Positions 6,018-48,644 of a stretch of DNA of 53,825 nucleotides are shown piece after piece. Position 1 is the first letter of the stretch. The number at the start of each line of letters is the position of its first letter. The notes beneath the pieces are model-generated. The model saw only the letters and a program-made list of their open reading frames with translations. It ran no database searches and was not told where the DNA came from. The DNA is from Octopus bimaculoides. Lineage: Eukaryota. Position numbers and translations under genes: made by a program. The DNA lies in NCBI RefSeq assembly GCF_001194135.2, contig NC_068981.1, positions 84,909,380-84,963,204 of the forward strand, read 5' to 3'.

Positions 6018-6212
6018 ATGCCTGTGACAGTAACCGATTTTCCAACAAGATTTATTACAATGCTCATCCATCCGATTGCACCAAATATGTATCATGTACC
6101 CAGTTGAGCAGTGGTAATTATTTAGGTGTCGTCATGTCCTGCGCCCGAGGCCGCTTTTGGAATGATAAAGTATTGACATGCGATTACCCATGGAATGTTA
6201 AATGTGCTCACG
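6018..6212 (+). CDS. Pif-like matrix protein, first visible exon: chitin-binding peritrophin-A (CBM14/ChtBD2) domain
   Basis: Acceptor ttaacag|6018, donor 6212|gtaagt, 195 bp, phase 1-1. Translates DACDSNRFSNKIYYNAHPSDCTKYVSCTQLSSGNYLGVVMSCARGRFWNDKVLTCDYPWNVKCAH with six Cys and the C-x-x-G-x-x-W/F pattern of CBM14. Confidence 0.9.
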
Positions 6213-7426
6213 GTAAGTATGATTTCTTATTTACTGTTTTTATTTGTATATTAGTACTCCTTTACTATTATTTAATGGACGTGCGTAACCTAGTAGTTAA
6301 GGCGTTGCATTCATGATCACAAGATCGTGGTTTCGATTCGTGGACCGCTGTGTTCTTGAGCAAGCAGTTCATTTTACGCTGCTCCAGTCCATTCCGCCGT
6401 AAATTAGTAACCATGCAATGGAGAAGCATCCCGTTCAAGGGAGACGTTGTGATCTCGGTCACTTATATGTCATGGAAACTGGGTATCTGAAATTATGAGT
6501 CATAGGGCTTGAAACAGTAAGGTCCATTACTTAGCCACAGGAGAGGAAGGATAAGTGAATATATGACATTTTCAAGCTCTCCGCGGTTGATGTTCAGTTC
6601 TATTTTATATTTACAAGAAGAACGTGCGGAAGAAGGAATTTGAAGGGCTGAAGCTCTGTAGAGGAATAACTGAGAAACGTGTGTATTATGGAACCAAGAT
6701 GTGATGAAACACAGTAAAAAATCTTAAGAGCAGGAGATGGACGTGTCTGATCTATTTGGATAAATGTGGTATGCTGCGCCTGCTAGTTTAAACAAATTGA
6801 GATCATTGTAGTATTGTAGACAAGATAGAAAGAAGAAACTTCTTTCTTGAGCTGGGATTGTAGAATGCTGGTGAGTCGATATTTATTAATCAGTTGCGTC
6901 GCCTTATTTTGGATATGATGTAGAACGCTTTACAGTGTGTGACTATAGCACTTGTCTCATATGCATGAGAAGATCTACTCCAAAATGGGTCTTATTAGAT
7001 GTTTAGGAAAGGTTAATATCTGGTAAGAGTTGAAGTATTTTCTGATGCGATATAGGCTTATAACTTTATTTAAATTTAAAAAAAGAATGAAGTATTAAAG
7101 TGAAACGAAGTTAGTGACGCTCTCTGTCAATGAGAATGAGATTAATAACATTAAAAAAAAAATTAGAATAAATCCAAGCGCTTTGACCAAAAGTAAATAT
7201 TAATGTTTTTCGTTTTCTTCGTCAAGAAAGAAATTAGATATGATATGAATGTCTGAAAAATATCGAAATAGCGTATGTAGGGACAGGGAATCAAGTAGAG
7301 AGAGTGGTGATACGTCATGAGACAAGAGTAACAGAGAATAGAGAGGAAGGAAAAGCCGTTGACAAGTTACTTAGAAACGACATTATGTATATATATGCAC
7401 GCACATATCCAATATTCGTACGTGCA

Positions 7427-7465
<39 letters not shown>

Positions 7466-8199
7466 CAAGTAGACATTCGAAAACTTACGCGCACGTACGA
7501 ACGTATCTAACATATACAGATACGTATATATGAATACACATGCATATGTCTACGCTTGCACATAAGTATACTATGTCATAACAACACAGAAAAGTACGTG
7601 AGGTATGAAGTGATCTGGGAAGTGTGGTGGTTAAAATGAGGTGTAGCAAGACAAAGGTTTGAGACACGAAGAGAGAAATGTCACCAAGGTCAAAGGTGGA
7701 AAAAAATTCATTAGCTCATACAAAGGTAGGGTAGCAACAAGTCGGTCTATGCGGATATGAAACAGAAACATTTACGCATTCAATTTCACGCGCCCGCACA
7801 TACACCTACACAAGCACGCGCACAAAACGAATGTACACATACATGGGCAAATAGTAAATGCACATCAAGACTACTATAAACATACCTATGATTAAAGACA
7901 TTTTAGCCGAGACTATCCTGCCTATTTTCTATGTGTAGGGGACATAGGGAGCACATGGAATACATTGTCATTATCCAATGGGTCCCTTTGTTTAACACTA
8001 TAGAGCATATTTCTGAGAGATGTGACTTGTTTCTAGCAGATCGAGCGATATCATTCAGTTTCCTTTGTCGGCTCAATAAACAATGGTGAACGCATATTGT
8101 AGAAATGATGATTATTTACCTAAGACGGTGGTATGAATGTTAGGGACCGTATGATAATTGATACGTCGTTTAACAAAAGTGTATTTTTATTTTACAAAG

Positions 8200-8580
8200 A
8201 CGTTACAGGTATTTTAAAAGTGAATATGCTGGCCAAAGATCCCATCCACTCCGTCTAGAGTGAGGACCATGTACTGAAAAAGCTTGGGATTCAAGGGCCG
8301 CCAGATATGTAATGCTTTGCCAAAACATCTGAGGGATCTTCGTGGAGTAGGAGTAGATGTTTTGTTTTGAAGAGACAACTTGATTTCTTTCTACCCAAGG
8401 TCTTAGATGAACCTATGTCACGGTAAGAAACTGAAAAGAGGGTAGCAACGTCAAACTCACTACTTCGCTAAAAGTTAATCGCATAAGAATGGCCATTGAA
8501 AAGGTGACTACACTAACGGTGCTCCAGTATGGCTGTAGCCTTTTAGCTGAAATGTATGAAAGAATGAAAGAAAGTGGAAG
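8200..8580 (+). mobile_element. 3' end of a CR1/L2-group LINE
   Basis: Remnants KSLGFKG...NALPKHLRDLRGVGVDVF..KRQLDFFL...DEP and a tail ggtgctccagtatggc...ctgaaa. Confidence 0.7.
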
Positions 8581-8959
8581 AAAGGGTAAAAACAAATACT
8601 TTGATTCACATTTAACATTATGAAGTTACTTTCTCACCTGACGTGCAACAGGTGCAGACCCTGGAGGAACTGCTTTTATTTTTTTTTTTTTTGGTAAACG
8701 TAAATGACTTCATGGTATCTTGCACGGACATATCAAGCAACTAGTGTAGGGCTCTGAAATGAACTTCGACTATCAGCATTGTTCCAGAGCCGTCTTCAAA
8801 AAGTTAGTATACAGTTTCAAATAATACGGAATATTGGAAACAATTTCTTCATTTTGTTGTGTCTAGGGAGAGTCATTACACCAAATTTTTTTTATTGTTT
8901 TACATTTAAATGTGTATGTAGTGATATCAAATTATGTTTACTTAGGGTAAAGACCTCTT

Positions 8960-9262
8960 TCAGTCATGAATGACCATGGGATTGCACCTAGAAAGTTACC
9001 CTCCAAGGCACAAGTCCAGGCAATGTTGTTTACGGTAGACCAGCAGTCGCTCATGCATACTAGCCTCCCCTTTTCATGTCACCGACGTTGTCCAAGGGAA
9101 AGGCAAAGGCCGATTTCAGCTTTCCACCAGTGACATCGCAACTCATTTCTACAGCTGAGTGATATGGAGCAACGTGAAATAAAGCGTCTTGTTCAAGAAC
9201 ACAACACACAGTCCAGTCCGGGAATCGAACTCACTACCACGTGATTGTGAGCCCAACGCTAT
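8960..9262 (-). mobile_element. tRNA-derived SINE family D; related copies at about 6277-6470 (+) and 44546-44790 (+)
   Basis: Head ...ctcacaatcacgtggtagtgagttcgattccc, then tgtgttcttgaacaag...ttcacgttgctcca shared among the copies. Confidence 0.65.
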
Positions 9263-9866
9263 GCTGGCCACATCTGGCCCAAATATTCAACCTGTTTTGT
9301 GTTCAAACCAGCCAGATCCAACCTCACACTCCTACCCTAGAATGTTATTCTAAAAATAAATAATCACATCATCAAAATCTCGAAGCTGCATAATACAAAT
9401 CAATATAAATAAATAAGCCTTACATTTTTCAGGGTAATCAGAATACTAAAGGGTTAAAGGGTTCTCTCGGTAACAATAACAATACCAGGAGACCATTAGA
9501 TTTCACCCAAAATATATGGTAAACGTTCATGCACTCTCAGACTTATCTTTGGATTCTTTATTCTAAGTGGCCAAACATAGCTTCTTTAAACGTGTCACCC
9601 GCTGGAGTGTTAGTACACAGCCATCGTTAAAATTCTTTATTTAAAAATGTCATGTCTTCGAAAATTTAGTATGTAATTTCAATAATCATGGAAAATAGAA
9701 TATATATTCTTTAATTGTTTCACGTTTAAACGTGTTCATATTTCTAAAATATTCAGTAGTACTAATGAGTTTTATATAAACGTTATAAAAATTAACACCT
9801 GTGTATTTCACAAATACAAACAAGCGTAAGTGTGAAACGAAATGATTTTCTTACATGTTGTGTGTC

Positions 9867-9930
<64 letters not shown>

Positions 9931-11095
9931 NNNNNNNNNNTATGTTTGTGCGTGTGAGTGTGTGTGTGTGTGTGTGTGTGTTTGTGTGTGTGTATGTTTG
10001 TGTATGTGTTTGTGTGTGTGTGTGTGTGTGTGGTTGTTTGTGTGTGCGTATGTTTGTGTATGTGTTTGTGTGTGTGTATATATGTGTGTGTATGTCTATG
10101 TACATATGTGTTTGTTTTTATGTATGTGTGTATATATATATATCAATGAATGTGAGTATGTGTGTGTGTGTATTATACAAAATGGGTAGATGGAAGAGAG
10201 ATTATGTGAGTGTGTTTAGTGGATGAAAGACTATAAAATGATGAAAGAGAATGAAAACAAAAATTCGCTGTGCCTTTCTGACAACACTTTATGTATCTCA
10301 TTAACACTCGCTCCAGCTCAACAACTGCATTTCAATCTCTCTACTGTTCCTTTCTTGACTCTTCAATGTTTTACCCCATGGGTACCTAAGATACAGGTTG
10401 TTTTATGCATTTTTTCTGAGACTCTCTACGGAAAATGGTAAAGATTGTATGAGAAATGGTAATTTTTTTAAGCAAATAGCAAACATCGACGCTTATACAT
10501 ACAGATGGAGGGTGGATTTAAACGAATGTTTATATAATACCAAACCAATGAGGCATATAAGTTTGTATATCATCAAATTTTACGGTGAAGTATTGAAAGG
10601 AATGTTTTGGAATTTCCCCCAATCAACATCCTCCCAAAAGGGTTTCGGTAATTCGTGAAGTATTTTCTTTCAAGAATTACTATCTTAAAGGAACTTACGA
10701 GCTCATCGTTAGTGACAAAGTGACAAATATAGGTAACGAAGCAACTTATGACTAAATGTTATCGAATGTATTTTTTTCGTTTCGAAGTTGAGAAAGGATC
10801 AGTGAAAGATTGAGTGAATGTTTAGTCGGAATGCAAAAAGCGGAAATTGTGGAGGATAATGTGCTATATAGAAAAACTGAATGAAAGATAATATTGAAGA
10901 CCAAAAAAGGAATACAACACACAGGTACTGGCAGACACGCGTGTTTAGTAGCAATTCAGTGGCTCTACTGATTCCAAGAGTTATTTGTCACCATCGCACG
11001 AAATCATTTAGTAAAACATTATATATATAAACAATTATATATATATTTACAAATGCAAAGTTATCCTTGATATTTTAATGTATCTTCTCTTTCAG

Positions 11096-11293
11096 ATAAA
11101 TGCAAAACACTGGGAAATCCTGCTGTCTATCAAACAGATTCTACATCATGTTTAATGTGGGGAGTCTGCAGCTATGGAATAACAACTTCTATTCAACCTT
11201 GTGCAGACCTGAAAGCTTCAGGAACTTACCATTCGATGTTAGGATCTTGCCTTGATTCCCGAGAATGTACACCCCATGGTATCACTACTCCAC
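11096..11293 (+). CDS. Pif-like matrix protein exon: second, divergent six-Cys chitin-binding-like domain
   Basis: Acceptor ctttcag|11096, donor 11293|gtaaga, 198 bp, phase 1-1. Translates DKCKTLGNPAVYQTDSTSCLMWGVCSYGITTSIQPCADLKASGTYHSMLGSCLDSRECTPHGITTP. Confidence 0.85.
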
Positions 11294-11875
11294 GTAAGAT
11301 ATTTTTGGGTCTCTAAATTAAATGTAATACAGTATCGACCTCTTATCCGGCTTCTAGAAATCCGGAATTACCAAAACCCGACTATTTTTGAAATTGGCTA
11401 GTTTTGAATTTCACGCGCTAGCCGTAGTTTGCCCCGCAGATGCTTTGTTAGTTAATTTGCATACGGTTTGTTAAAAAATAGCTTTGTTGTTTACATTTTA
11501 AGTGGATAGAAAAAGATTAAACACTCTGTTTTAGAAGTGTATTAATTTGTACCTGTATCTATTAAATTTGTCTTCGATTAATTTTCATCCTATAAGTATT
11601 ATACCGTATACGTGGTGCAATATGATATACTTTAAAATTTTAAAGTGGTTTAATAATTATGAAGCAGACCCTGCTTTAGAAGTATATTAATTTGACTTGT
11701 GAATACAGTTTAGTCCTTTACTTTACATAGATTATCATATATTTTAAGTATATATTTCAGCTGTCTCTACAAGGAAAATCCAGAAATCCAGGCCATTTCC
11801 AGTATGAAACTTGCCTGATATTTAGTCAGACACAGTATACATTAAAATGTATTTCAATGTATGCATAATTTGTAA

Positions 11876-12088
11876 GACGGCGAGCTAGCAAAATCGTTAG
11901 CATGTTGGGCAAAATGCTTAATGACATTACGTCCAGTCTTACTTTCTGAGTTCAAATTGTTACCAGGTCGACTTTGTCATTCATCCTTTCCAGGGTCAAT
12001 AAATTAAGTACCAGTTGAGCACTGGGGTTGATGTAATCGACTAACACCTGCCCCGAAATTGCTGGCCTAGTACCAAACATTGAAACGA
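11876..12088 (+). mobile_element. SINE family A (intronic)
   Basis: Full head-core-tail match to the 3022 copy. Confidence 0.85.
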
Positions 12089-12175
12089 ATATATGTATAA
12101 TTTTGTTATAGAAAAATAAGATGTCACAGTTTGAGTCGATTATAAATAATGGTATTATATTTTTTTAATTTGTAG

Positions 12176-13924
12176 CATCGAGACCTTGCTTTCCCGTACC
12201 AAAATGCCAACTTTCTGAAATCCTTGATTATGAAAATTGTCGGTGCTTGCCGAAATGTGCTTATCCACCAAACTGCGGGGTTAATGAACGACTGAATACT
12301 ACAACTTGCCGTTGCCAAAATGCTTGTCCTTTTACTCAGCCATGCAGTGATTCGCAAACTCTTGATTTGATTACATGCCAATGTGTTTCCAAATGCCCAA
12401 CATTGTATTGCCGTAATGGTGAAAAGATAAATTATGATACCTGTCGTTGTGAGCCTCGTTGTCGAAATGTGCAGTCTTGTGGTATTTCTCAAAAGTTCAA
12501 CGATATCACATGCCAATGCGAAGAAAAATGCAGTTATGCAGTTTCATGCCGAGCAAATGAAAAAATGAACTATGATACTTGTCGTTGTGAACCTCGTTGT
12601 CGAAATGTACAGTCTTGTGGTATTTCTCAAAAGTTCAACGATATCACATGCCAATGTGAAGAAAAATGCAGTTATGCAGTTTCATGCAGAGNNNNNNNNN
12701 NNNNNNNNNNNNNNNNNNNNNNNNNNNNNNNNNNNNNNNNNNNNNNNNNNNNNNNNNNNNNNNNNNNNNNNNNNNNNNNNNNNNNNNNNNNNNNNNNNNN
12801 NNNNNNNNNNNNNNNNNNNNNNNNNNNNNNNNNNNNNNNNNNNNNNNNNNNNNNNNNNNNNNNNNNNNNNNNNNNNNNNNNNNNNNNNNNNNNNNNNNNN
12901 NNNNNNNNNNNNNNNNNNNNNNNNNNNNNNNNNNNNNNNNNNNNNNNNNNNNNNNNNNNNNNNNNNNNNNNNNNNNNNNNNNNNNNNNNNNNNNNNNNNN
13001 NNNNNNNNNNNNNNNNNNNNNNNNNNNNNNNNNNNNNNNNNNNNNNNNNNNNNNNNNNNNNNNNNNNNNNNNNNNNNNNNNNNNNNNNNNNNNNTTATGA
13101 TACCTGTCGTTGTGAGCCTCGTTGTCGAAATGTGCAGTCTTGTGGTATTTCTCAAAAGTTCAACGATATCACATGCCAATGCGAAGAAAAATGCAGTTAT
13201 GCAGTTTCATGCCGAGCAAATGAAAAAATGAACTATGATACTTGTCGTTGTGAACCTCGTTGTCGAAATGTACAGTCTTGTGGTATTTCTCAAAAGTTCA
13301 ACGATATCACATGCCAATGTGAAGAAAAATGCAGTTATGCAGTTTCATGCAGAGCAAATGAAAAAGTAAACTATGATACCTGTCGTTGTGAGCCTCGTTG
13401 TCGAAATGTACAGTCTTGTGGTATTGCTCAAAAGTTCAACGATATCACATGCCAATGCGAAGATAAATGCAGTTATGCGGTTTCATGCAGAGCAAATGAA
13501 AGGGTAAATTATGATACCTGTCGTTGTGAGCCTCGTTGCCAAAATGTGAGAGTTTGTGACGTCATTAAACAACGGTTCAATGATATTACATGTCAATGTG
13601 AAAATAAGTGTAATTATTTGCCAACCTGTCGAAATGATGAACGAATAAACTACGATACTTGTCGCTGTGAATCCCGTTGCGCGGTGGTAAGCAACTGCAA
13701 TGCAAACCAAAGATTTGATTATGTGCAATGCCGATGTATCAATCAGTGCATTAGGCCACCAGTATGTACAACTGGTGAGCAGCTTGATCTCATCAACTGT
13801 AGATGTGTTAATGTCTTCTGTCCAGATGCTCCAATTTGTCAGAATGGAGAACGTTTAGACAGTACAAGATGCATCTGTACAAGAACCGCTACAGATTCAC
13901 CAGTAGTACGACCAACAGGATTAG
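12176..13924 (+). CDS. Pif-like matrix protein exon: long Cys-rich tandem-repeat region (23-aa units, 46-aa dimers); contains an N gap
   Basis: Acceptor ttgtag|12176, donor 13924|gtatat, phase 1-1, open on both sides of the gap. Unit NYDTCRCEPRCRNVQSCGISQKF/NDITCQCEEKCSYAVSCRANEKM with a 138-bp period (12430 vs 12568). Ends in Thr/Pro-rich linker TRTATDSPVVRPTGL. Confidence 0.9.
12430..13900 (+). repeat. Coding minisatellite, 69-bp monomer / 138-bp dimer
   Basis: Near-identical 138-bp units in the centre, degenerate units toward both ends of the exon. Confidence 0.95.
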
Positions 13925-15469
13925 GTATATTATTTTCCATATATATATTTTTTTTTATCAACAAATTTTAATTTATTCCCTGTTGATAGCAGTTATTCGG
14001 TTAATGTATCGAGTCATTAGGACACCACCAAAGGCCTATCTTCAAGTGACCGTTTGTGTAAGTTTCCTATACCATCTCCGAAGCCACGACAAGCTGTCGA
14101 GGCTAATGAGACATTCTTGTTTTATAGTACTGTTTGTATTAGTAGCCGTAAACATTACCTCTTCGTGGCACCGACTTAGAGTTAGGTTAAGTTGGACTTC
14201 CTTTAGCCACTCAGTGAACGAATATGGACTATATTAGGTGGCTGTCATTTGCTTTAGACAATGGAAGTAAATCACGCTATCAGATATGTCGATTTTATAA
14301 TCTAATCTTTATCTTTGTCGGCATGACTTGTTATCGCTAATATTTGGATTTTTAATGATTTCTTCCCTCTAAATCCCGTGGTCTTGTTAGGATTCTTGAA
14401 AATGTTTGTGTTTTCAATTGATAGATCTGAATAGTTTATTATGTTTCAATTGATAGATCTAAATAACAATTGATTGCTGTCGTCAAGTCTTCAATTCTTG
14501 GAAAGTTTGGGAGTGCTCGCTAAAAAAATATGTACATACTAGTGAGTTCTGTGATTTAGGCTTCACCTTTACAAAGCATAGGTGAAGAAGGTTAGATACA
14601 AGTTTATAGTGGTGTAAATGATGTGTAAGTTGTTGTTGTTGTTATCGTCTAGTCCTGATTCATCAATTCTATTATTGAAAATGCTCCATACTCGACAATT
14701 TTGTCTTTTATTTTGTTGACGTAGTGTCGACTGGCCAGCGTTAACCAATATATTCATTGTTTTTAAGTCGAGTATGATTTGAGGGAAATTTTACTGATAC
14801 TTCCACAAGGTCAAGCAAGCGAGTAAAGTCTCCTTCATTGGCTTGAAACGGGGGAATATGTAGTCTAAAGCAGCAGGGGCTAGAGAAAGAAAAGGAAGGT
14901 GTAGCCTTAAAGCGTACCCAAGTTCGATGGATTGAATATAAAGCAAGGTTCTTTCTTTGAATACATGGGATTGAAGCATTAAAGCCATTAAATTAGTGCT
15001 GGAAAAAATGCCTAGACCAATATATTATGTAAGAAGCAGTAACTTTTGTATTCATTTTCAAAGTCAGTAATCTCGTTAGATTTATTGGTCCGGTGGGTTA
15101 GCTTTGACTGAGGGCACACTCTAGAAGGTCAAAACACAGTGGTGTCTCAAAGTTTTGTTTTATCGGTGAATCACATGTGTTATGAACATACAGCGTCTAA
15201 AAGGAGACGTTCTCTGATAATGACGACTAACAGCGATTAGATATTTACGCTCGAATACGACAGAATATATCGAGAATCAATAGAAATATTATTTTAGATT
15301 CTCTGCATGAACCCCATGAGTAAATAACATCTATTTCCGAACTATATTTCATCTTTTCGTCACTAGATTATAAGTAGAAGTCAGCACAACCGAATACATA
15401 CATACATACGTAGATACATGCATACATACATACATACATACATACATACATACATACATGAAAAGAAGA

Positions 15470-16110
15470 ACTCACAGTATATAGAAGCCATACTGATCTG
15501 GATTATTAGTGAAATGTGCCAGTGAATGCCTCATAAAATGTGAATATAATGACCTGGCATAGTGATTTGGGACAAAGAGAAACTGTGTAAAGTTGTAGAA
15601 ATCAGCTGCCCAGCAAATGTTAGCATAAGGCTAAGAGCCAGTGAAAAAGGAAAGACCTACGCTGAACTATCGAGAAATCTAGTTACTCTACCCAGATTAC
15701 AAGCCCAAGTTTATACCTGTCATTATTAGGGCACTGGTATATGTAACACACTGCCTAAGTACCTATCTTGAGAAATTAAGCATCTCAGAACCAAATTCGA
15801 AAACTGTTGATCCAAGCCATCACTGGAACTCTAAATGTTTGTAAAACTTTTCAGACGTTTATCATTTAAGTATATATCTGCATGTCTAGACATGCAACTA
15901 TATGCATGAGAATACATACATAAAAAAAAATACAAGTCTGCACATACACTGACTCCAAGTACTACACATAAACGCACATACATGCAAAAATACCCTGTTG
16001 ATGTTGTTGAAATTCCAATGAAGGAGCTCTGGATCTAGGCTAGAAACCGGCTCTTCTTCTACCGACAAGAAATCTTGAAATAAAATTGAATAATGACATA
16101 TATACATACA
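15470..16110 (+). mobile_element. 3' end of an R4-like LINE with 3' UTR
   Basis: Remnants WDKEKLCKVVEISCPANV, FIPVII.ALVYV and IQAITGTLNVCKTFQTFII*; (TACA)n-type repeats on both sides. Confidence 0.7.
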
Positions 16111-16291
16111 TACACACGTACCTACCTACATGCATACATATACGCACACATGTGCGTGTGTAAAAATATATATTTATATAGTGTGTGTGTGTGTGTGTGC
16201 GTGTAAGTTTTCTCTATGTCAATGCATTCTTCCGTAATTCTTGCTTTTCATCCTTTCATTTTGTTTTATTTTCAATTCTTACTTTGAAAAG

Positions 16292-16656
16292 ATTGCAAAC
16301 CAACTGTGAATATCAACTTTCGAAGTCTTAACCAGACCAATTCGCGATTCCTACACGTAAAAGGTGTTACAACTAGATACAACACAGAAGCTGAAGATAA
16401 CTACACCGGAGTGTTCGATGGTTATTGTCAAATACTTCTTACGAAATTCAATTTCGGAAATACCATTCCTCCAATAGCCATTTCACTTCGATACCGCCTA
16501 GAAAAGAGCCAATTGGGTATGAAACCATACGCTCTTGTAACCAACAGTAATAACATGCAGACACCATCCATTTTAATCGCAGCCACATCAAGCTATATAG
16601 AATTCGGAATTCGAACACTACAACAAGGCTACAGATCAATCAAGGTTTTAGCTTCA
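16292..16656 (+). CDS. Pif-like matrix protein exon: N-terminal part of LamG/ConA-like domain
   Basis: Acceptor tttgaaaag|16292 (weak), donor 16656|gtaagt, phase 1-0. Translates DCKPTVNINFRSLNQTNSRFLHVKGV...GVFDGYCQILL...PIAISLRYR...SILIAATSSYIEFGIRTLQQGYRSIKVLAS. Confidence 0.85.
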
Positions 16657-16964
16657 GTAAGTTAAACATTTTTTATATGTATCTTCATGTACATTGACAT
16701 TATGATAAATGAAACACGCATTCGTAGGCATGACTTGATTTTTATTTTAATTCTTTGTAACAATGCAACAAAGTGTTCCCTGATAATTCTTTGTGCTTAA
16801 GTGTCCAGTTGGATTTGGGATATTCAATACAGAGATCCAAACAACCACGATGGTAAGACATTCGTAGAAACAAATAGTATAAACTTATGTTAATCGCAAA
16901 AGTCTCATATATAGTATAAACCTGTGTTAATCGCAAAAATCTCACATATATGTCTCACCATGCA

Positions 16965-17044
<80 letters not shown>

Positions 17045-17312
17045 CACGCATATAATGTTAAATGCGTTACGCTATCACATAGTTAGTTGAACCGAGAGGC
17101 AAAGAGTGAGGGGTGAAGTAGGGAAAAATAATAGTTATTACGCTAAAATCGAATGTTTGACGCTAGTTAGTTTAAGGGTGCGGCAAAGGGGAGGGAGAAG
17201 TGTGTTAGTGCTGAGAGGTAAGAGAAACGTGTAGTTAGTTGAAGAAAGAAGCGGGAAGTAAAGAGGGTACAAACATGTTAAGCGGAGGAACATGTAGTAT
17301 AATTGAAGCGAG

Positions 17313-17410
<98 letters not shown>

Positions 17411-18080
17411 GAGAGGGAGGGAGAGAGAGTGAGTGTTGATTGAAGGGAGCGCAGTCTTGGAATGCAGTTACATTATTTTAAATGTAGTATAATAGGATAT
17501 TGAGACAGACAGTAAAAATAAAGGTTCAGTTGTCATTACAGGTTTTATGTTCAGTTGTTTCTATATCTTCAAGCCGTCAATTTTTTGGATAGACAGATTA
17601 ACTGACGGATAAAAGATAAAAATGAAATGGCCTAAGCAAATAGCTGTGGATGTTACTTCTACCATTTTATGTGTAGAAGCCCAGAGACTGAATCCATGCT
17701 ATGGAACCGCAATTTCTGAGTACAAAGTTTCTGGGTACAAATACCACGGAAATTAACTTTGCTTCTCATCCTTACGGAATCGATAAAATAAAGAACCGTT
17801 CAAATGCTGAGATCGATGTAATCAGTGAATCCTCGTCTTCTCAAACTGTTGACCTTGTGCCAAAATTTGAAACCATTTTAAAAGTCTATTTACACTTAAT
17901 TTTCATAATGGTTTGAAAATGAAATTTTTATAGATATTTAACTTCATTTTATGTTGTAATTGAACTTATTACTTTTTTTAAAAAATAATATCGATAGGAA
18001 ACGAATTTTTATTTCATTCCCAGTGCCTTATGAATCAGTAAATTGACTATTATATATTCCTTCAATTCCTTGTGTTTTAG

Positions 18081-18171
18081 GGTTCTGATTGGGAATATGT
18101 TGGTTTAATATATGATGGTAATCAACTTATTGCCCAGGTTGGAGATTATGTTCAGAAGACACCTGTATCAG
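18081..18171 (+). CDS. Pif-like matrix protein exon: LamG-like domain
   Basis: tgttttag|18081, 18171|gtaata, 91 bp, phase 0-1. Translates GSDWEYVGLIYDGNQLIAQVGDYVQKTPVS, matching the LamG W-x-x-V-x-L-x-Y-D-G strand. Confidence 0.88.
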
Positions 18172-18538
18172 GTAATATCGACATTATTTCTTTTGATGTT
18201 ATTAATAAATGTGAAAAGGAAAAAAAAAAAATTCATTTAAAAAGAAAATTACATATCAATTTGTAAACACAAGCATTGTCTAATAGATCAATTATTCTTT
18301 ATAGAAAACAAACATAGTTAAGAGAACATATGTTGAGATTTTTACCAATCAGTTTTATCCATTTCTTTAACTTATCAAGAAACATCCTATAAAGAAATAC
18401 GTATCCCAAGTTCTCAAGTCCTCTCTTTAAAATATCTTGTTTCGTGTATAAAATAGTTTAAGATATATACAGTCCCATATACTGGAACGAATCTTAATGA
18501 ATTGGATTTAATTTGTTATTTACTTTTGCATTTTTCAG

Positions 18539-18618
18539 GAACAATTGAAGCAAAGTCAAATAGTTTGGTAATTGGTGCTGGTTATGGATATGAAAATTTC
18601 CGAGGAGAAATAGATTAT
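18539..18618 (+). CDS. Pif-like matrix protein exon: LamG-like domain
   Basis: tttttcag|18539, 18618|gtaatt, 80 bp, phase 1-0. Translates GTIEAKSNSLVIGAGYGYENFRGEIDY (LamG L-x-I-G...F-x-G-x-I-D motif). Confidence 0.88.
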
Positions 18619-18699
18619 GTAATTTATCACATCTTATTTTCCACTTCTTTCTCATATTCTCCCAATAAAAGTCTTGGTTTTAATACAGGAAACGTAAAA

Positions 18700-19295
18700 A
18701 AGCAGCAAGAATCTTTAGCACAGCGGGCAAAATGCTTAGTGGCACAATGCTTAGCTGCAAAATGCTCTGAGTCCAAATCCCACCGAGGGCAACTTTACCT
18801 TTCATCCTCTCGGAGTTGATAAAATAAGTACCAGCTGAGTACTTGGTTTGATGTAATCAACTTATCCCCATCTCCGAAATTACTGGTCTTATACCAAAAT
18901 CTGAAACTAGTTTAAGAAAGTAAATTGAATTTTGTCAGAAGCGTATTGCCAGCGAACTGAGAGAACTACATATAGAGGGTTGAAACCTTTTCAGTAACTT
19001 GACAAATACCTGAATTCTTAGGAAATATTTATAACATTATTCATCATTCTACTTCGTTCGAAATAGAAGGAAAAATAACAGAATTGCATGAAGAGAAACG
19101 TTAGCACGCCCGGCGAAACGCTTAGCGGTATTTCGTTTGTCTTTATGTTCTGAGTTCAAATTCCGTCGAGGTCGACTTTGCCTTTCATCCTTTCAGAGTC
19201 GATAAATTAAGTACCAGTTGCGCACTGGAATCGATCTAATCGACTGGTTCCCTCCTCCAAAATTTCAGGCCTTGAGCCAAGAGTAGAAAAGAATA
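18700..19295 (+). mobile_element. Two SINE family A copies (18700-18910, 19090-19295), intronic
   Basis: Diagnostic ttagcac.ccgggc.aaatgcttag and ctttcatcct...gataaa.taagtaccag blocks. A further partial copy lies at about 17700-17880. Confidence 0.8.
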
Positions 19296-21288
19296 TTGCA
19301 TAAATAGTTGGAGTCATATGGGAATGTATCAAATCTCTCTGCAAAATTAGGTCTTGTAAGGGCCTTTCTCGTTGTCTGGGATGAGGGTCGAACTGACTGG
19401 TTTCATTATTACTTAACACTGCATTGGGATCTACTTAAATCTACTGCGCTTGCTCTCAAGAGCCTTAGTTTCACAGTGAGACTAAATACGTACAGCTATT
19501 ATTCCCTGCAAGTATTTATTTATAACCAATGCTGTAATAGTAATCTGGTAAATGGATCACTGATTATTAATAATAAGTATTTAGGTATTTAGTTGTTTAA
19601 TCACCTGCATTACTTACTGATTGAATTCGCAGGAAATTGCTGTGTATTCTGCAGATTAGTATACCCGCTTAGCGTTATTTTCGGGAAGAATCAGTGACAG
19701 AATGTGTAATAGGCTGTAACATTGAATTTCAAGTATAATCCATCCAGTGAACTTTTGCACGCTTTCTGTCCATCCAGTTTTACCAACAAGGATTGCGTGA
19801 AACTAGGTTATCATAGAAAACATATGTACTAGATTCCACGTAGTAGAGTCCATGTGATTGCAACGCAAACTGCATTTATGGTACTCAGGTAATTAATGTA
19901 TATTTACATTGGTTTGTACATTTGAACCAAAATACAACATTACGAACTCAATAATTATGTAACATATCAGCGCTATAATATATTTGCTTATTGCTTTTAT
20001 CCTTGGACTGGTTTCACTTATCCGAATGAGGGCATGTTGGAGCACTACATCGAAGTAACTTAATCGATAATATCGGCTCTCAATGCTAATTTCCTCTTTA
20101 ATTGCTCTCTATTTAATCAAATCACCAAACATTTGCTTTCCCAATTACCATACATTACCTTTCGATATCTCGAAGCATCGATTTACACTGATGTGTAGGA
20201 AGAAAGCACAATCGCATACAAGCGTCCACAAATGCACTATTTGTCTTCTTTTCTATATCTATTTAGATTAGAGTAAAACGTCAGGAGAGTACAGAACATA
20301 TATCAATTAATAACATATCAATTAATGCATGACAAGAAGAGCAGGGATTACGGTGATTGTGTGATTCTTGTTCTTTTGGTATTCATTACGTAGAGAACTA
20401 GCTAGTAGTCTTTCAGTAATAGTCCTGGCTTCCTGAACACTTAGTTGAAATCGCGCCTAGAGCAACCCTGCCGTTCATCCTTTTGGGGTCAATTGAAACA
20501 GAATACCAGTTTAATGTTTTGCTCAATATTTTTGTCTCTTTCTATCTTTCTCTGGTTCTTTCTGCAAGAAATGTGTTGTTGTTAGACCTGGATAGGGATG
20601 AATCCACCAGGCTTTGATGAAGAAGACATGTCATAAGTTATGACAGTGACCATGAAATTCTATCACAAGTTGAGAGACCGATGCAAGGAAAATATACAAC
20701 ACACGTGTACATCGTACACATATTCGTGCAAACACACACACACCTTGTACCTGTACGAACACACACACACACACACACACACACCTAGATATACAAACAC
20801 GCACACACATATATACACACACACGCACGTACAAGTGCACGCACGCGCACACACGTGCTCTCAGACACGCACGCACAAATATTTTTCAATAAGTTCAGTG
20901 AAGATAAGACAATTTGTTACGGTCTTAGACCTATTTGGCTCACTTCATTTAGTATTTCCCACTTTAACCACGTGTACTTTACGCAGAAGACTACGCACAG
21001 GAAATCTTTTTAAATTGTTTAACATTTTATGTTTTGCAAAAAATCTACCCATTTTGTCATTCGTTTCTAATGTCAAGTGCGTACAGCTTCTACTTTACTG
21101 AAAAGGTTTTACATAATCTAAAACATGTCTGACGTTTTACAAACTCAAACTCACACTTCATTGCATACACACATTCAGTTTCGGTTTCAGAGTCCTGTTC
21201 ATTACGCGCGTGATTTTTTTTCTTATTGATAAAACTATTTTTTCCGGCTCTCTGCATTAGAAATGTTAGCGAGTTGTTAAATATTATA

Positions 21289-21427
21289 CAGAGCCGTCAT
21301 AAGGCATGTGCACACTGGGCACTTCTGATCTATCTCTGCTGTAGCTTGATATCAAGAAGCAAATATACGAATAGTGCCCAGTGATTTGATTTGCTCTTTG
21401 GCTCTTAATGTTGCTAAGACGGCCCAG
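21289..21427. mobile_element. Small palindromic MITE-like element
   Basis: Outer inverted repeat gccgtc/gacggc; inner perfect 11-bp inverted repeat cactgggcact (21313) / agtgcccagtg (21373). Confidence 0.45.
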
Positions 21428-22092
21428 AATATATGTTTTTTTATGTTGAGGTAATTCAAGGAAATTGCTTCGTGTGTTTTATTACATATAACAGAACAGC
21501 TGTGCTTTACGTCTGACTAGTGACGCTAATCCAAATATCGCTTGGTCTATTCATGTTCGAATTATTTTTTATTTTTATAATTAAGCAAATACGAAACAGT
21601 CAATTAAGAGTCTCTTCACTAATGCTTTATGTACTTGAATCGGAAATCAACCGTGAATGTCTGTTTACTCTGAATTACTTGTTTCTGATATATGCTGTTA
21701 ATAATCTCCTCTTCTATTTCTTAGCTTTAGCTTTTGTTTTGATCTTTGACTCTATCAAACCAGTTTTAAGGTATGCAGTAATGGAAATCTTAAGATGGTC
21801 ATTTTGGGATTATAAAGTTAATCTTAAGAGACTATACCTATACTGCTTTTATTTGGGACCTATCATCGAATATCTTTAGATATATTATTTCTGAAGATGT
21901 ACAATGATGTAGATTAAGTTACCGGCTCGTGTACGCAGTATAAATGCTTATATTTTAAATATATACTTTAAAAGTGAGGTTAATAGTGACCATCATTAAG
22001 TTAGTAACCGATAACTCATACAGTAAAGTTGTAGACTTTTCATACAAGAATCTTGTTATATTCTATTTTGTATTAACCCTATATACATATAA

Positions 22093-22167
<75 letters not shown>

Positions 22168-22545
22168 TGAGTGTGCACGAGCATGTTTGTCAGTCTCCCC
22201 ACTCCGAAGATGGAGACCGGATTTACGGTGATGTTTATATGTATTCACTACTGGTTGCATATCCTTGACTTTTAGTATATTCCATCTGCCAACACATATA
22301 GTATGTAATTCTGAACCCCAGAAACAGTCAGAAACAGCTGCCGGACCATGAAATACCATACCTTCTCCTGTTAATGTTCTGTCCTTTGTGTACTCCATGC
22401 AAATCCGTTTTATAAATAGATACATATCTGTACGCTTAGACATGAATGTTCATCCGAATATCTTCACGTTTTGTTTCTCTCTCCATCTATGTATCCCTAT
22501 ATATATTTACATGTATATACACGCACACGCACGCACACACACACC

Positions 22546-22576
<31 letters not shown>

Positions 22577-22742
22577 ACACAAACACATACACATATATAT
22601 GATATATGTGTGTGATTGTGTGTATTTCTATATCAAGTTCAAACATGCTTGTTTATTAGCATGATTACCTCTCCCCACCTCACACAATGTATGTATGTGA
22701 ATACATACACACAAACACACACACACACACACACACACACTT

Positions 22743-22785
<43 letters not shown>

Positions 22786-23030
22786 TCCATACATGCACAC
22801 ATACATACACATATGATATCCTGCATATACACACGCGCATTGATAATTTCATTCCTATTCCTATCGAATACTCGTTTCTCTTTCACATAAAGATTACAAA
22901 AATAAGACAAAGAAAGAACGAGAGAAAGAAATAAGAAAATAATAAAGACAGGAAGAATGAATGAATAAATGAATGTATGAAAGCCATATTGTAACTCGTT
23001 CACATTTTGTACGTTTCTTTCTCATTGTAG

Positions 23031-23063
23031 GTGAGATTTTTCCAATGCAACCCAGATCCATAG
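23031..23063 (+). CDS. Pif-like matrix protein terminal coding exon
   Basis: Pyrimidine tract and cattgtag|23031; VRFFQCNPDP then TAG. Completes FRGEIDYVRFFQC. An AT-rich 3' UTR with AATAAA (about 23248 and 23329) follows. Confidence 0.8.
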   Translation: MRFFQCNPDP

Positions 23064-25468: not shown

Positions 25469-26805
25469 CATGACGCCATCGCCCTCTTCGATAGGGATAT
25501 TATTGATAAAGAACTGGCAAAATGTTTGCCAGTTAAAAATTATTTTGTGTCCAGGGGTGTCAAATATGCAACGGTGTGGTTGCTTTTTGACATCCCTGAG
25601 GAAGCTTGCATTGCTGCAAGCCAGCCTCTAGAAGGGGAATTAATATTGTTCCTTCCCACATATTTTGGGAGGAAGGTAATAAGAGCCTGGGTATGTGGTC
25701 TACCCCCGGGCACCGAAGCGGGGTGGATTGGAGATACCATCCGGCAGGGACTGGGGGATAGCGGACCCAGTCTCTTAAATGTAAAACTGACGCCGGCGAC
25801 CGATCGGGAGGGATCAAAAGCGATTTTGACCCTGTGGAGCCCATCAGGCTGCGGCCGAAATAGTCTTTCCAGACTTTTTTTTAATGGCTGGCTACAGGTA
25901 TCCGGTGATACTTGAGGGACGCCCCACAGGTGTCACTCGTGCATGGAGCCAGGTCATATTAAAAAGAACTGCCCCCAGGACCATCGTAAGGTCCTGGAAC
26001 AGTCACTGGAAGCCACCTCTCCTACCCGGTCAAAAGGAGAGGTGGATGTGGTTGAGGAGGCTTCAGCATCCTCGACCCAAAAAGGATTAAAAAAGAAGAA
26101 AGCGGGCAACAATGGTTGCCCGCTGAAAGACCCTAGGGCTTCGGGAGGTGGGGGGAGAGACTCCGGACAAAGCGGAAGAACGCCACTCTCCCGAAGTCAG
26201 GAAGAAAAGGAAAAAGAAAGAAGAACGGGTCATTGCAGGCGGACGATGATGTGCCGTCTGCATGTCCCGAAGTTGTGCCACCTACGGTGGAAGAAACGAT
26301 CCCCACCCCTGAAGATGAAGAATTACTTATCTTTTTCTACAAGGGCGGGAAGGTCGAAAATAGTAGAAGAACATAAAGAGACAGTAGATATGGCCTGCAC
26401 ACGAGATCCCGAATGGCCTTTGCAGATAGCTGTGGAGGTCATAAGGATTTTCGTGTAGGAAAAGCATAGAATACTTAAAGAGGATTGTCGACTAGGAGGT
26501 GCAAAAGCCTCGTTAAGAGGGTTTGAAACCGCATCTTATTACATTATTTGTAGTGGTTTAAAACCTTAATTGTGTTTTTTTAAAAATGTTAAGTAAGTGG
26601 TTTTAGTGCCTCTTTTTTGTAAGAGGTTTGAAATCTCATATTGATTTTTTTTTTAAATACGTTTCCGAGAAAAACCCAATCGGCGGGCGTTAGGTTTCGT
26701 CTCTCATTTATTCATTTTATGTCATTTCATTTTCATTCATTAATGTGTTGCCCAGCCCGTAGCTACTCTATGTATTGCCGTTATGGCAAATAAAATGAAA
26801 TAAAG
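25469..26805 (+). mobile_element. Gag/ORF1-only LINE-derived element (L1/Tx1-like zinc knuckle) between two SINE copies
   Basis: Frameshifted ORF1-like sequence leading to YPVILEGRP and CHSCMEPGHIKKNC (CX2CX4HX4C, 25931-25972), then a Lys/Glu-rich tail. No RT seen. 3' end has hairpin TTGCC-GTTAT-GGCAA and two AATAAA. Confidence 0.7.
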
Positions 26806-48532: not shown

Positions 48533-48644
48533 GATAGCACACCAAACTGCGGAGCTCTCTTGCAACATCAATCTGCAGCTACGATCATAAATCATTAAGT
48601 AAAATATCCATTAGCAAAATTGTTTGTGATTTTAGTTGGCTTAC

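What the first reader, a model, noticed from the sequence alone, without database searches (positions are those of the whole stretch)
6018..23063. Pif/BMSP-like chitin-binding + LamG protein with a long silk-like Cys-repeat spacer
Seen: seven phase-compatible GT-AG exons give about 900 aa (5'-partial, gap included) in the order CBM14, CBM14-like, long Cys repeat, LamG ending FRGEIDYVRFFQCNPDP*. Established: ChtBD2 plus C-terminal LamG is the architecture of molluscan Pif/BMSP shell-matrix proteins. Inference: I do not know of a Cys-repeat rod in that family, where inserts are usually charged low-complexity tracts. If the host is a shell-less octopod, this may be a shell-toolkit gene repurposed for beak, radula, sucker cuticle, stylet, statolith or egg-case matrix.
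Basis: partly seen in the sequence, partly recalled or inferred. Interest (0 to 1): 0.75.

Follow-up and report, generated by a model that had tools for sequence, protein, structure and literature searches.

The report
Octopus Pif-like gene with silk-like repeats
This is a real, conserved octopus gene for a secreted chitin-binding matrix protein related to the Pif/LamG3 shell proteins of other molluscs, in which one small cysteine exon has grown into a long silk-like repeat; databases list it only as "balbiani ring protein 3-like".

Summary
Seven phase-compatible GT-AG exons (window 6018-23063, + strand) give CBM_14, a degenerate second chitin-binding module, a long Cys-repeat exon and a C-terminal LamG-type domain ending FRGEIDYVRFFQCNPDP*. 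The window is Octopus bimaculoides chromosome CM046601.1. The gene is RefSeq XP_014775856/7, "balbiani ring protein 3-like", with a 66%-identical orthologue in Argonauta hians.

The Pif-family reading is largely right. An exhaustive HMMER search with the LamG domain finds mollusc Pif-like, BMSP-like and LamG3 proteins first. All six introns match, in position and phase, those of an Argonauta VWA-type "PIF-like" gene. The repeat exon sits exactly where that gene has a 159-nt exon with a single C-x10-C-x-C module. The repeat is Pfam CXCXC (Balbiani-ring-3 type).

There is no VWA domain, so this is the LamG3/Pif-like type, not Pif or BMSP proper.

The 10-N gap is intronic. The 403-N gap lies inside the repeat array. 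The frame is kept, but copy number is unknown, because the 260 nt on either side of the gap are identical.

A Nucella protein also combines CXCXC repeats with this LamG domain, so the repeat is not unique to octopods. Function and tissue are untested.

The parts
6018..6212 (+). Exon with the first chitin-binding domain (ChtBD2/CBM_14). It enters in phase 1 from an upstream exon that is not in the window.
   Evidence: AG/GT sites and phase. Pfam CBM_14 at 39.6 bits, E 6e-10. 100% match to XP_014775857.1.
9931..9940 (.). 10-N assembly gap inside a (TG/CA)n microsatellite in intron 1. Not coding.
   Evidence: the gap lies between exons 6018-6212 and 11096-11293, within CVCVCV/THTHTH-type microsatellite frames.
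11096..11293 (+). Exon with the degenerate second chitin-binding-like module (six Cys).
   Evidence: No Pfam hit. It aligns colinearly with the family's second ChtBD (exons 1+2 score 83.6 bits against a family profile). Omega is 0.06 against Argonauta.
12176..13924 (+). Single long exon encoding the CXCXC (Balbiani-ring-3-type) array. Units are 23 aa (C-x5-C-x10-C-x-C-x3), organised centrally as a 138-nt / 46-aa super-repeat. The exon contains the 403-N gap.
   Evidence: Pfam CXCXC above cutoff. Tandem Repeats Finder gives period 138 with 94% matches. Unit listing. The Argonauta orthologue has the array as one uninterrupted 1353-nt exon in a gap-free assembly.
12692..13094 (.). 403-N assembly gap inside the repeat array. 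Its length is inconsistent with the repeat register.
   Evidence: The same gap is present in GCA_001194135.2.
12432..12691 (+). The 260 nt immediately before the gap, 100% identical to 13095-13354 immediately after it. This is either overlapping contig ends or a perfect higher-order duplicate.
   Evidence: RefSeq isoform X2 (776 aa) equals the join that merges the two copies; X1 (822 aa) has one more unit.
13095..13354 (+). Post-gap copy of the same 260 nt.
16292..16656 (+). LamG-type domain, exon 1 (starts D|CKPTVNINF).
   Evidence: Same intron position and phase as the Argonauta PIF-like gene.
18081..18171 (+). LamG-type domain, exon 2 (GSDWEYVGLIYDG...).
18539..18618 (+). LamG-type domain, exon 3 (...NFRGEIDY).
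23031..23063 (+). Terminal micro-exon VRFFQCNPDP plus the TAG stop. It carries the conserved C-terminal Cys of the family (y.C.P).
   Evidence: The intron at the same position and phase (0) is present in both Argonauta genes.

Best explanation
The region holds the 3' seven exons of one protein-coding gene of Octopus bimaculoides (RefSeq XP_014775856/7, 'balbiani ring protein 3-like'). The gene is a paralogue, so far found only in octopods, within the molluscan BMSP/LamG3/Pif family of secreted chitin-associated matrix proteins.

Shown:
- The full protein, from the octopus RefSeq v1 models and the Argonauta orthologue, is: signal peptide, about 6 GDQT[RQ]NG heptads, ChtBD2, a degenerate ChtBD2, a CXCXC array, then a LamG3-type domain. 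There is no VWA domain.
- The gene keeps the family's exon skeleton. The array is a single exon in the slot where a VWA-type Pif-like paralogue has a 159-nt exon with one C-x10-C-x-C module. Both exons are flanked by phase-1 introns.
- The central 46-aa units are more alike within a species than between species.

Inferred:
- The array arose by tandem duplication inside that exon and is still turning over.
- The protein is secreted.
- It anchors to chitin through its N-terminal ChtBD2.
- It uses the four-Cys-per-23-aa array as a stiff spacer that can form disulfide cross-links, as in Chironomus BR3 silk protein.
- It presents the C-terminal LamG3 jelly roll to a second ligand (mineral, glycan or another matrix protein).
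- In a shell-less octopod the target is most likely a chitinous extracellular structure. Which one is unknown.
For: Identity: 100% match to XP_014775857.1, and 66% identity with the same architecture in Argonauta hians. The window is identical to CM046601.1.

One gene:
- The exon phases are compatible.
- The Argonauta gene has the same junctions in a gap-free assembly.
- Omega is 0.06 for the ChtBD exons and 0.15 for the LamG exons, with no indels.

Family:
- The LamG profile search gives Lottia BMSP-like at 1e-14 and chiton PIF-like at 7e-13. Lottia, Patella, Haliotis, Mytilus, Nucella and an Argonauta PIF-like protein follow.
- Of the 44 hits with a full-length LamG match, 34 carry CBM_14 and 15 carry VWA.
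- Exons 1+2 align at 83.6 bits to the family's ChtBD1-ChtBD2 block.
- The six introns are identical in position and phase (1,1,1,0,1,0) to those of Argonauta PIF-like GAB1600178.

Fold: AlphaFold pLDDT 91 and pTM 0.89. Foldseek finds 484 PDB matches at E<=1e-3, all ConA-like/LamG jelly rolls.

Array:
- Pfam CXCXC above cutoff.
- 138-nt period.
- Central units are 91-100% alike within a species and 67-76% between species, while the last unit is orthologous at 78%.
- The family's pre-LamG module has the same C-x10-C-x-C spacing.
Against: - There are no expression, proteomic or binding data for this gene. No paper in the library mentions it.
- Signal-peptide status rests on inspecting orthologue and RefSeq N-termini, which lie outside the window.
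- The current RefSeq model (421 aa) and the O. vulgaris model (392 aa) start inside the array and omit the ChtBD exons.
- A position-specific test of residue similarity between the octopus units and the family's pre-LamG module was not significant for Octopus (z=1.4). It was not specific either, since bacterial CXCXC proteins scored higher. The in-situ origin therefore rests on exon position, not on sequence.
- The LamG placement within the family is unresolved: it is a long branch with no supported sister.
- Nucella has its CXCXC array in a different position, upstream of the ChtBDs.
Confidence: 0.8

Rival explanations
1. Two separate transcription units. One would be an upstream chitin-binding gene (exons 6018-6212 and 11096-11293). 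The other would be an independent 'balbiani ring protein 3' gene that starts inside the repeat exon and ends with LamG.
For: The current RefSeq XP_014775856.2 (421 aa) and O. vulgaris CAI9715631.1 (392 aa) both begin inside the array and lack the ChtBD exons.
Against: - The 421-aa model starts at a Met 134 nt after the 403-N gap (L001 10001 = window 13228). It is truncated by the gap.
- The O. vulgaris model opens with an out-of-frame translation of the repeat (MPMRRKMQLCSF is the window's other frame).
- The earlier RefSeq isoforms X1/X2 and the Argonauta model from a gap-free assembly join all exons.
- The phases fit.
- The same exon order and phases occur in the paralogous PIF-like gene.
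- The repeat exon has a 3' splice acceptor and no upstream in-frame start of its own.
Confidence: 0.07
2. A genuine Balbiani-ring-3-type silk or mucus protein, as the RefSeq name says. On this reading its resemblance to Pif-like proteins comes only from common, promiscuous extracellular domains (CBM_14, LamG).
For: CXCXC is the only repeat family detected in the array. The 23-aa period with four Cys resembles Chironomus sp185/BR3 (from memory). Whole-protein Pfam scans report no CBM_14 or LamG.
Against: - No insect BR3 appeared among the homologues. Outside octopods, only bacterial or metagenomic CXCXC proteins matched, through the repeat.
- The LamG domain hits named mollusc Pif/BMSP/LamG3 proteins specifically.
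- Six of six intron positions and phases are shared with a PIF-like gene.
- The failure of the whole-protein Pfam scan is a filtering effect, since the segments do hit.
Confidence: 0.05
3. The long repeat is partly an assembly artefact. On this reading the true array is short (the RefSeq X2 form), and the gap plus the duplicated 260 nt are unmerged overlapping contig ends.
For: The 260 nt on both sides of the gap are exactly identical, and the identity starts and ends at the gap edges. 403 N does not fit the 138-nt register. X2 equals the merged join.
Against: - Even the merged form keeps a 362-aa array of about 16 units.
- Argonauta has a 451-aa array in one gap-free exon, so the array itself is real.
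- A sized gap (403 N rather than the 10 N used elsewhere in the window) and a contig break inside a repeat are what extra identical copies would produce.
- This rival concerns copy number only, not the nature of the gene.
Confidence: 0.4

Closest known systems
Laminin G3/Pif-like proteins (the 'LamG3' clade of BMSP/LamG3/Pif; Setiamarga et al. bioRxiv 10.1101/2021.07.10.451900; Yoshida et al. 2022, PMC9635652)
   Same: Secreted. No VWA. N-terminal ChtBD2 modules followed by a C-terminal Laminin_G_3-type domain bracketed by conserved Cys (C[KR]P ... F[KR]G.ID...C.P). Mollusc-restricted. Already known to persist in shell-less octopus.
   Different: The canonical form has three consecutive ChtBD-type modules and is about 350-420 aa. 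Here the third module's slot is filled by an array of at least 16 CXCXC units, and an NG-rich heptad tract precedes ChtBD1. I could not test whether the published octopus LamG3 (Ocbimv22010162m) is this gene or another. Its reported three-ChtBD architecture suggests another.
Argonauta hians 'protein PIF-like' GAB1600178.1 (VWA-ChtBD-LamG; P0026)
   Same: Identical intron positions and phases from ChtBD1 to the stop codon (six of six). Same order of modules after the VWA. Homologous LamG domain (46.7 bits).
   Different: It has an N-terminal VWA domain and a Thr-rich linker. Its third module is a 53-aa exon with a single C-x10-C-x-C. It lies on a different chromosome-scale contig. The LamG domains are only about 25% identical.
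Nucella lapillus KAL8620138.1 (hypothetical protein; P0017)
   Same: Besides the octopod proteins and its own close paralogue P0102, it is the only protein in the set that combines a Pfam CXCXC array (59 bits), ChtBD modules, the Pif-type LamG and NGG-x-x-T-[RQ] heptads.
   Different: It has two VWA domains. Its CXCXC array lies upstream of the ChtBDs, not between ChtBD and LamG. The heptads are C-terminal, not N-terminal. The unit is 19 aa (C-x10-C-x-C-x-C-x3), not 23 aa.
Chironomus Balbiani ring 3 secretory protein (sp185) and the VEGF-C/D silk-homology domain (Pfam PF03128 CXCXC)
   Same: C-x10-C-x-C-x(1-3)-C spacing repeated every 22-26 residues. Secreted, disulfide-rich, fibre- or matrix-forming context (from memory for BR3).
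   Different: No chitin-binding or LamG domains. No detectable homology outside the Cys pattern. The RefSeq name reflects only the repeat.
Pif (Pinctada fucata) and BMSP (Mytilus) shell matrix proteins
   Same: ChtBD2 plus a LamG-like C-terminal region. Extracellular chitin-associated matrix role. The Lottia BMSP-like shell protein is the best LamG match outside octopods.
   Different: Pif and BMSP are defined by one to four VWA domains, and Pif by a cleaved acidic/basic aragonite-binding Pif80 part (PMC11291548). Neither feature is present here.

Membership tests
BMSP/LamG3/Pif family, LamG3 (Pif-like, VWA-less) type | N-terminal secretion signal | tested here: inconclusive
   The signal exon is not in the window. 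RefSeq X1/X2 and the Argonauta orthologue start MKMRVITFGLLLCFLSEASG / MKMQAISFGFLLLFCSEAFG. By inspection these are textbook signal peptides, but no predictor was run.
BMSP/LamG3/Pif family, LamG3 (Pif-like, VWA-less) type | At least one ChtBD2 / CBM_14 chitin-binding domain upstream of LamG | tested here: met
   CBM_14 at 39.6 bits against a cutoff of 22.1. Exons 1+2 score 83.6 bits against the family's ChtBD1-ChtBD2 profile.
BMSP/LamG3/Pif family, LamG3 (Pif-like, VWA-less) type | C-terminal Laminin_G_3-type domain homologous to that of the family | tested here: met
   Pfam gives 23.4 bits, below the 27.6 cutoff. The exhaustive HMMER search's best non-octopod matches with a full-length LamG alignment are mollusc Pif-like/BMSP-like proteins, E 1e-14 to 1e-6. 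The conserved bracketing Cys and the F[KR]G.ID motif are present. AlphaFold pLDDT is 91 with a ConA-like fold.
BMSP/LamG3/Pif family, LamG3 (Pif-like, VWA-less) type | Three consecutive ChtBD-type modules directly before LamG | tested here: not met
   Only two ChtBD-type modules are present. The third slot holds the CXCXC array. The slot itself is conserved as an exon flanked by phase-1 introns.
BMSP/LamG3/Pif family, LamG3 (Pif-like, VWA-less) type | Shared gene structure with family members | tested here: met
   Six of six introns coincide in position and phase with Argonauta PIF-like GAB1600178. Only one family member was compared.
BMSP/LamG3/Pif family, LamG3 (Pif-like, VWA-less) type | Monophyly with the published LamG3 clade (Ocbimv22010162m, Aargo013232, Nautilus LamG3) | not tested
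   Those sequences could not be retrieved. A rough NJ tree of 46 LamG domains left the octopod pair as a long branch with no supported sister.
BMSP/LamG3/Pif family, LamG3 (Pif-like, VWA-less) type | Presence in a shell, eggcase or other extracellular matrix (proteomics) | not testable with these tools
   No proteome or expression data were accessible. No paper mentions the accession.
Pif / BMSP sensu stricto (VWA-defined; PMC11291548) | One or more VWA domains | tested here: not met
   Segment-wise Pfam of the window-encoded part found no VWA, and none was detected in the full-length models. The full-length sequences run signal peptide, heptads, then ChtBD with no room for a VWA domain. tblastn with Argonauta and Nucella VWA finds nothing in the window or in the 51.7-kb Argonauta locus.
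Pif / BMSP sensu stricto (VWA-defined; PMC11291548) | Charged low-complexity mineral-binding region (Pif80-like) | tested here: not met
   No Asp/Lys/Arg-rich tract. The only low-complexity tract is the N-terminal GDQT[RQ]NG heptads.
CXCXC-repeat proteins (Pfam PF03128; Balbiani ring 3 type) | Repeated C-x10-C-x-C-x(1-3)-C units scoring above the Pfam cutoff | tested here: met
   29.6 and 21.8 bits against a cutoff of 15. At least 19 units are visible in the window.
CXCXC-repeat proteins (Pfam PF03128; Balbiani ring 3 type) | Orthology to Chironomus BR3/sp185 beyond the Cys pattern | tested here: not met
   No insect protein appeared among the homologues at E<=1e-3. Only octopod orthologues and bacterial or metagenomic repeat proteins did. 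That search is word-indexed, so it is not exhaustive.

The most novel reading that the evidence does not exclude
The octopod gene and the Nucella VWA-CXCXC-ChtBD-LamG protein may be surviving members of an old, unrecognised branch of the BMSP/LamG3/Pif family. That branch would couple the chitin/LamG shell toolkit to a silk-like, disulfide-cross-linkable rod and NGGxxT[RQ] heptads. In octopods, which have lost the shell, this branch would have become a structural fibre-former for an octopod chitinous structure (sucker lining, stylet, beak/radula sheath or egg envelope, or the Argonauta eggcase). Domain-based surveys would have missed it, because full-length Pfam scans return nothing.
Probability: 0.25. 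Interest if true: 0.6.

Novelty: new variant of a known kind. Interest (0 to 1): 0.42.

Why it matters
The BMSP/LamG3/Pif proteins are the best-studied link between chitin and mineral in mollusc shells. What happens to them in lineages that lost the shell is an open question in cephalopod evolution.

This gene shows a concrete route of change. The family's exon skeleton is retained intact, while one symmetrical (phase 1-1) exon is amplified into a silk-type cysteine rod whose core units are still being duplicated or homogenised in each lineage.

It also explains why the gene has escaped Pif-family surveys:
- It has no VWA domain.
- Full-length Pfam scans return nothing.
- The automatic name points to an insect silk protein.
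- The current RefSeq and O. vulgaris models are truncated by an assembly gap or by the repeat.

If tissue data place it in a specific chitinous structure or in the argonaut eggcase, it becomes a tractable example of shell-toolkit redeployment. Without such data it is an interesting architecture, not a functional discovery.

Tried and rejected
1. AlphaFold on a two-sequence alignment gave pLDDT 36 and was unusable. A 30-sequence family alignment solved this.
2. A PDB sequence search with the LamG profile gave nothing significant (best E 0.08, neurexin and pappalysin). Only the fold comparison worked.
3. A position-specific scoring test asked whether the octopus 23-aa units derive from the family's pre-LamG C-x10-C-x-C module. 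It was not discriminating: z=1.4 for Octopus and 3.8 for Argonauta, but bacterial CXCXC proteins scored higher. I dropped it as sequence evidence and rely on exon position instead.
4. A word-indexed homologue search with the LamG family profile returned only 16 short mollusc or metagenome fragments and no cephalopod LamG3. The published octopus LamG3 gene could therefore not be compared.
5. An NJ tree with bootstrap found no supported sister for the octopod LamG.
6. Searches for the upstream exons (signal peptide, heptads, VGDGLPP micro-exon) in the window found none. An exact look-up of XP_014775857.1 in the contig index also found nothing.
7. The newer chromosome-level octopus assembly carries the same gaps, so it could not resolve the repeat number.
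8. Literature searches for the accessions and for 'balbiani ring' with cephalopod terms found no relevant paper.
9. A motif scan for further carbonic-anhydrase exons near 48.6 kb found none.

Full report
**What is there**

The window is AT-rich eukaryotic DNA (36% GC) with 14 runs of N. It is identical, gaps included, to Octopus bimaculoides GCA_001194135.2 chromosome CM046601.1. Window base 3228 corresponds to record base 84,912,607.

It has seven + strand exons with AG acceptors and GT donors:

| Exon | Coordinates |
|---|---|
| 1 | 6018-6212 |
| 2 | 11096-11293 |
| 3 | 12176-13924 |
| 4 | 16292-16656 |
| 5 | 18081-18171 |
| 6 | 18539-18618 |
| 7 | 23031-23063 (TAG) |

- The intron phases are 1,1,1,0,1,0.
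- With the gap read as X the product is 904 aa and ends FRGEIDYVRFFQCNPDP*.

**Domains (Pfam on segments)**

- Exon 1: CBM_14 at 39.6 bits (cutoff 22.1).
- Exon 2: no hit.
- Exon 3: CXCXC (PF03128) at 29.6 bits (cutoff 15).
- C-terminus: Laminin_G_3 at 23.4 bits, just below the 27.6 cutoff.

The array is built of 23-aa units with the spacing C-x5-C-x10-C-x-C-x3. At least 19 units are visible. The central ones form a 138-nt / 46-aa super-repeat with 94% matches.

**The gaps (tested first, as asked)**

- The 10-N gap at 9931-9940 lies in a (TG)n microsatellite in intron 1. It does not touch coding sequence.
- The 403-N gap at 12692-13094 lies inside the repeat exon. As written, the frame runs through it.
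- 403 does not fit the repeat register. The flanks stop at ...SCR and resume at YDTCRC, which requires 16+138k nt. Every such in-register fill also keeps the frame.
- The 260 nt before the gap are 100% identical to the 260 nt after it, with the identity ending exactly at the gap edges. Neighbouring units differ by 5-7%.
- RefSeq isoform X2 (776 aa) is exactly the join that merges these two copies. X1 (822 aa) has one more 46-aa unit.
- The newer chromosome-scale assembly carries the same gap.

Continuity and frame are therefore well supported, but copy number is not. The exon is 1086, 1224 or at least 1362 nt.

**Identity and integrity of the gene**

- The model is 100% identical to XP_014775857.1, 'balbiani ring protein 3-like isoform X2'.
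- A 66%-identical orthologue exists in Argonauta hians (882 aa, also named balbiani ring protein 3-like).
- Both full-length proteins begin with a signal-peptide-like N-terminus, followed by about six GDQT[RQ]NG heptads and then the modules seen here.
- These upstream exons are not in the readable window. In Argonauta they lie more than 10 kb upstream of the ChtBD exon, with a VGEGLPP micro-exon between them.
- The Argonauta locus has no gaps. It has the same six junctions with the same phases, and it carries the whole array in one uninterrupted 1353-nt exon.
- Between Octopus and Argonauta the ChtBD exons have dN/dS 0.06 and the LamG exons 0.15, with no indels over 320 codons. This is a functional, conserved gene.

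The current RefSeq model (XP_014775856.2, 421 aa) and the O. vulgaris model (392 aa) start inside the array. The first begins at a Met 134 nt after the gap. The second begins with an out-of-frame reading of the repeat. I read both as annotation truncations, not as evidence for a separate gene.

**Relation to Pif/BMSP**

I searched a profile of the two octopod LamG domains exhaustively against 1.84 billion representative proteins.

- After the octopus protein itself, the hits include Lottia 'Uncharacterized shell protein 26 / BMSP-like' (1e-14), chiton 'protein PIF-like' (7e-13), Lottia 236718 and Patella 'protein PIF'. Further Lottia, Nucella, Lymnaea, Haliotis, Mytilus, unionid, Dreissena, Solemya and oyster proteins follow. 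So does Argonauta hians 'protein PIF-like'.
- One unnamed 3,368-aa metagenome protein (P0007) outranks these at 3.5e-19, but only through nine partial stretches of the C-terminal half of the domain. I did not characterise it further.
- Every named hit with a full-length LamG match is a mollusc.
- Of the 44 hits with a full-length LamG match, 34 carry CBM_14 and 15 carry VWA.
- The octopus domain shares the family's bracketing cysteines (C[KR]P at the start, C.P at the end) and the F[KR]G.ID motif.
- With a 30-sequence family alignment, AlphaFold gives pLDDT 91 and pTM 0.89. Foldseek finds only ConA-like/LamG jelly rolls.
- Exons 1+2 align colinearly with the family's ChtBD1-ChtBD2 block at 83.6 bits. 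Exon 2 matches the family's degenerate second module.

The strongest single result is gene structure. The Argonauta VWA-type PIF-like gene (GAB1600178, on another chromosome-scale contig) has introns at the same six positions and in the same phases as the window gene:

| Junction | Window gene | Argonauta PIF-like | Phase |
|---|---|---|---|
| ChtBD1 / ChtBD2 | KCAH\|DKC | NCTT\|DLC | 1 |
| ChtBD2 / third module | — | — | 1 |
| third module / LamG | TGL\|DCKP | VKE\|ECKP | 1 |
| LamG 1 / 2 | VLAS\|GSDW | LFLQ\|ADGF | 0 |
| LamG 2 / 3 | PVS\|GTIE | AVT\|GNIE | 1 |
| LamG 3 / 4 | EIDY\|VRFFQC | QIQY\|FLLYMC | 0 |

**Origin of the repeat**

- In that PIF-like gene the third module is a 159-nt exon with a single C-x10-C-x-C, flanked by phase-1 introns.
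- In the window gene the exon in that slot is the CXCXC array, with the same flanking phases. A symmetrical 1-1 exon can grow by internal tandem duplication without disturbing the frame, and I infer that this happened.
- The family's pre-LamG module generally has the C-x10-C-x-C spacing.
- A residue-level scoring test could not separate this origin from generic CXCXC similarity. The inference therefore rests on exon position.
- The central 46-aa units are 91-100% alike within each species but only 67-76% alike between Octopus and Argonauta. The last unit is orthologous (78% between species, 39-50% to the other units of its own array). The core of the array is therefore being duplicated or homogenised independently in each lineage, which also explains why it broke the assembly.

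- Pif and BMSP proper are defined by VWA domains (PMC11291548). This protein has none. It corresponds to the VWA-less 'Laminin G3/Pif-like' type.
- The literature already reports that type in shell-less octopus, in the Nautilus shell and in the Argonauta hians eggcase matrix. It is highly expressed in arm and mantle epithelium (bioRxiv 10.1101/2021.07.10.451900; PMC9635652).
- The canonical form has three consecutive ChtBDs and no repeat, so this is a distinct paralogue or variant.
- The Cys rod is not unique. Nucella lapillus KAL8620138 has two VWA domains, a CXCXC array (59 bits), ChtBDs, the same LamG type and C-terminal NGG-x-x-T-[RQ] heptads.
- Among 129 proteins collected, such heptads occur only in the octopod proteins and in this Nucella protein and its paralogue. 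The module order differs, so common descent versus convergence is open.
- No orthologue from squid, cuttlefish or Nautilus appeared. No hit falls between E 1e-122 and 3.5e-19. As far as this collection shows, the gene is restricted to octopods.

**Why it has been overlooked**

- Full-length Pfam scans of the octopus and Argonauta proteins return neither CBM_14 nor LamG, and the precomputed annotation is empty.
- The segments do hit, so I attribute the failure to filtering of the Cys-rich repeats.
- The automatic name reflects only the repeat.
- No paper in the searchable library mentions the accessions.

**Mechanism**

Shown: a conserved, secretion-type multidomain protein with a bona fide chitin-binding domain, a Cys-rich periodic array and a LamG3 jelly roll.

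Inferred:
- It binds chitin through its N-terminus.
- The array acts as a rigid, disulfide-stabilised spacer that may cross-link.
- The LamG3 end binds a second matrix component.

In which octopus structure this happens is unknown. The beak, radula, sucker-lining, stylet, egg-envelope and eggcase ideas are all untested.

**Verdict**

The finding is a real and correctly described gene, and the Pif-family idea is largely right. It is already annotated under a misleading name. It is best classed as a new variant of a known kind: an octopod LamG3/Pif-like paralogue with an exon amplified into a silk-type repeat. Interest is moderate. The evolutionary anatomy is neat and well supported, but there is no functional evidence.

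Noticed in passing
window 48588-48953, minus strand: An open frame encodes an alpha-carbonic-anhydrase exon (FRYNGSLTTPPCSEAVIW; Pfam Carb_anhydrase 70.7 bits, E 2e-19). It lies about 25 kb downstream of the Pif-like gene on the opposite strand, so a second biomineralisation-toolkit-type gene is a neighbour. A motif scan found no further CA exons. Gaps at 49746-50163 and 51833-52047 may hide them.
   Followed up: partly
window 28159-30168 (+) and 52218-53417 (-): Reverse-transcriptase-like open frames are followed by a GIY-YIG nuclease domain (PF01541, 28.4 bits, in 29740-30168; 'YIGQTGRRLADRF' in the second copy). These look like remnants of Penelope-like retroelements.
   Followed up: partly
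window 25916-26455 (+): A 180-aa open frame has a CCHC zinc-knuckle (weak, 17.4 bits) and a basic tail. It is probably a gag-like retroelement remnant.
   Followed up: no
window 13228 onward; proteins XP_014775856.2 and CAI9715631.1: The current RefSeq model for this gene (421 aa) starts at a Met 134 nt after the 403-N gap. The O. vulgaris model (392 aa) starts with an out-of-frame translation of the repeat (MPMRRKMQLCSF). Both lose the signal peptide and the chitin-binding exons.
   Followed up: yes
proteins P0096 / P0002 (full length) versus window segments: hmmscan of the full-length proteins reports no CBM_14, CXCXC or LamG at E<=0.01. The same regions scanned as segments hit CBM_14 and CXCXC above cutoff. 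Domain-based surveys would therefore miss this gene.
   Followed up: partly
P0017 (Nucella lapillus KAL8620138.1), residues 1289-1357; octopus P0001 residues 38-79: NGG-x-x-T-[RQ] heptad arrays occur only in the octopod proteins (N-terminal) and in the Nucella VWA-CXCXC-ChtBD-LamG protein and its paralogue (C-terminal), among 129 collected proteins. Shared ancestry versus convergence is unresolved.
   Followed up: partly
L002 (Argonauta hians BAAFZT010000002.1) about 21004-21025: A micro-exon encoding VGEGLPP sits between the signal/heptad exon (about 20148-20414) and the ChtBD1 exon (31359 onward). The octopus equivalent (VGDGLPP) is not in the readable window.
   Followed up: partly
window-wide: N runs of exactly 10 (2969, 9931, 32416) versus sized runs (101-935): Two classes of gap are present. 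The 10-N gaps look like unsized placeholders and the others like span-estimated gaps. This bears on how much weight the '403' deserves.
   Followed up: no
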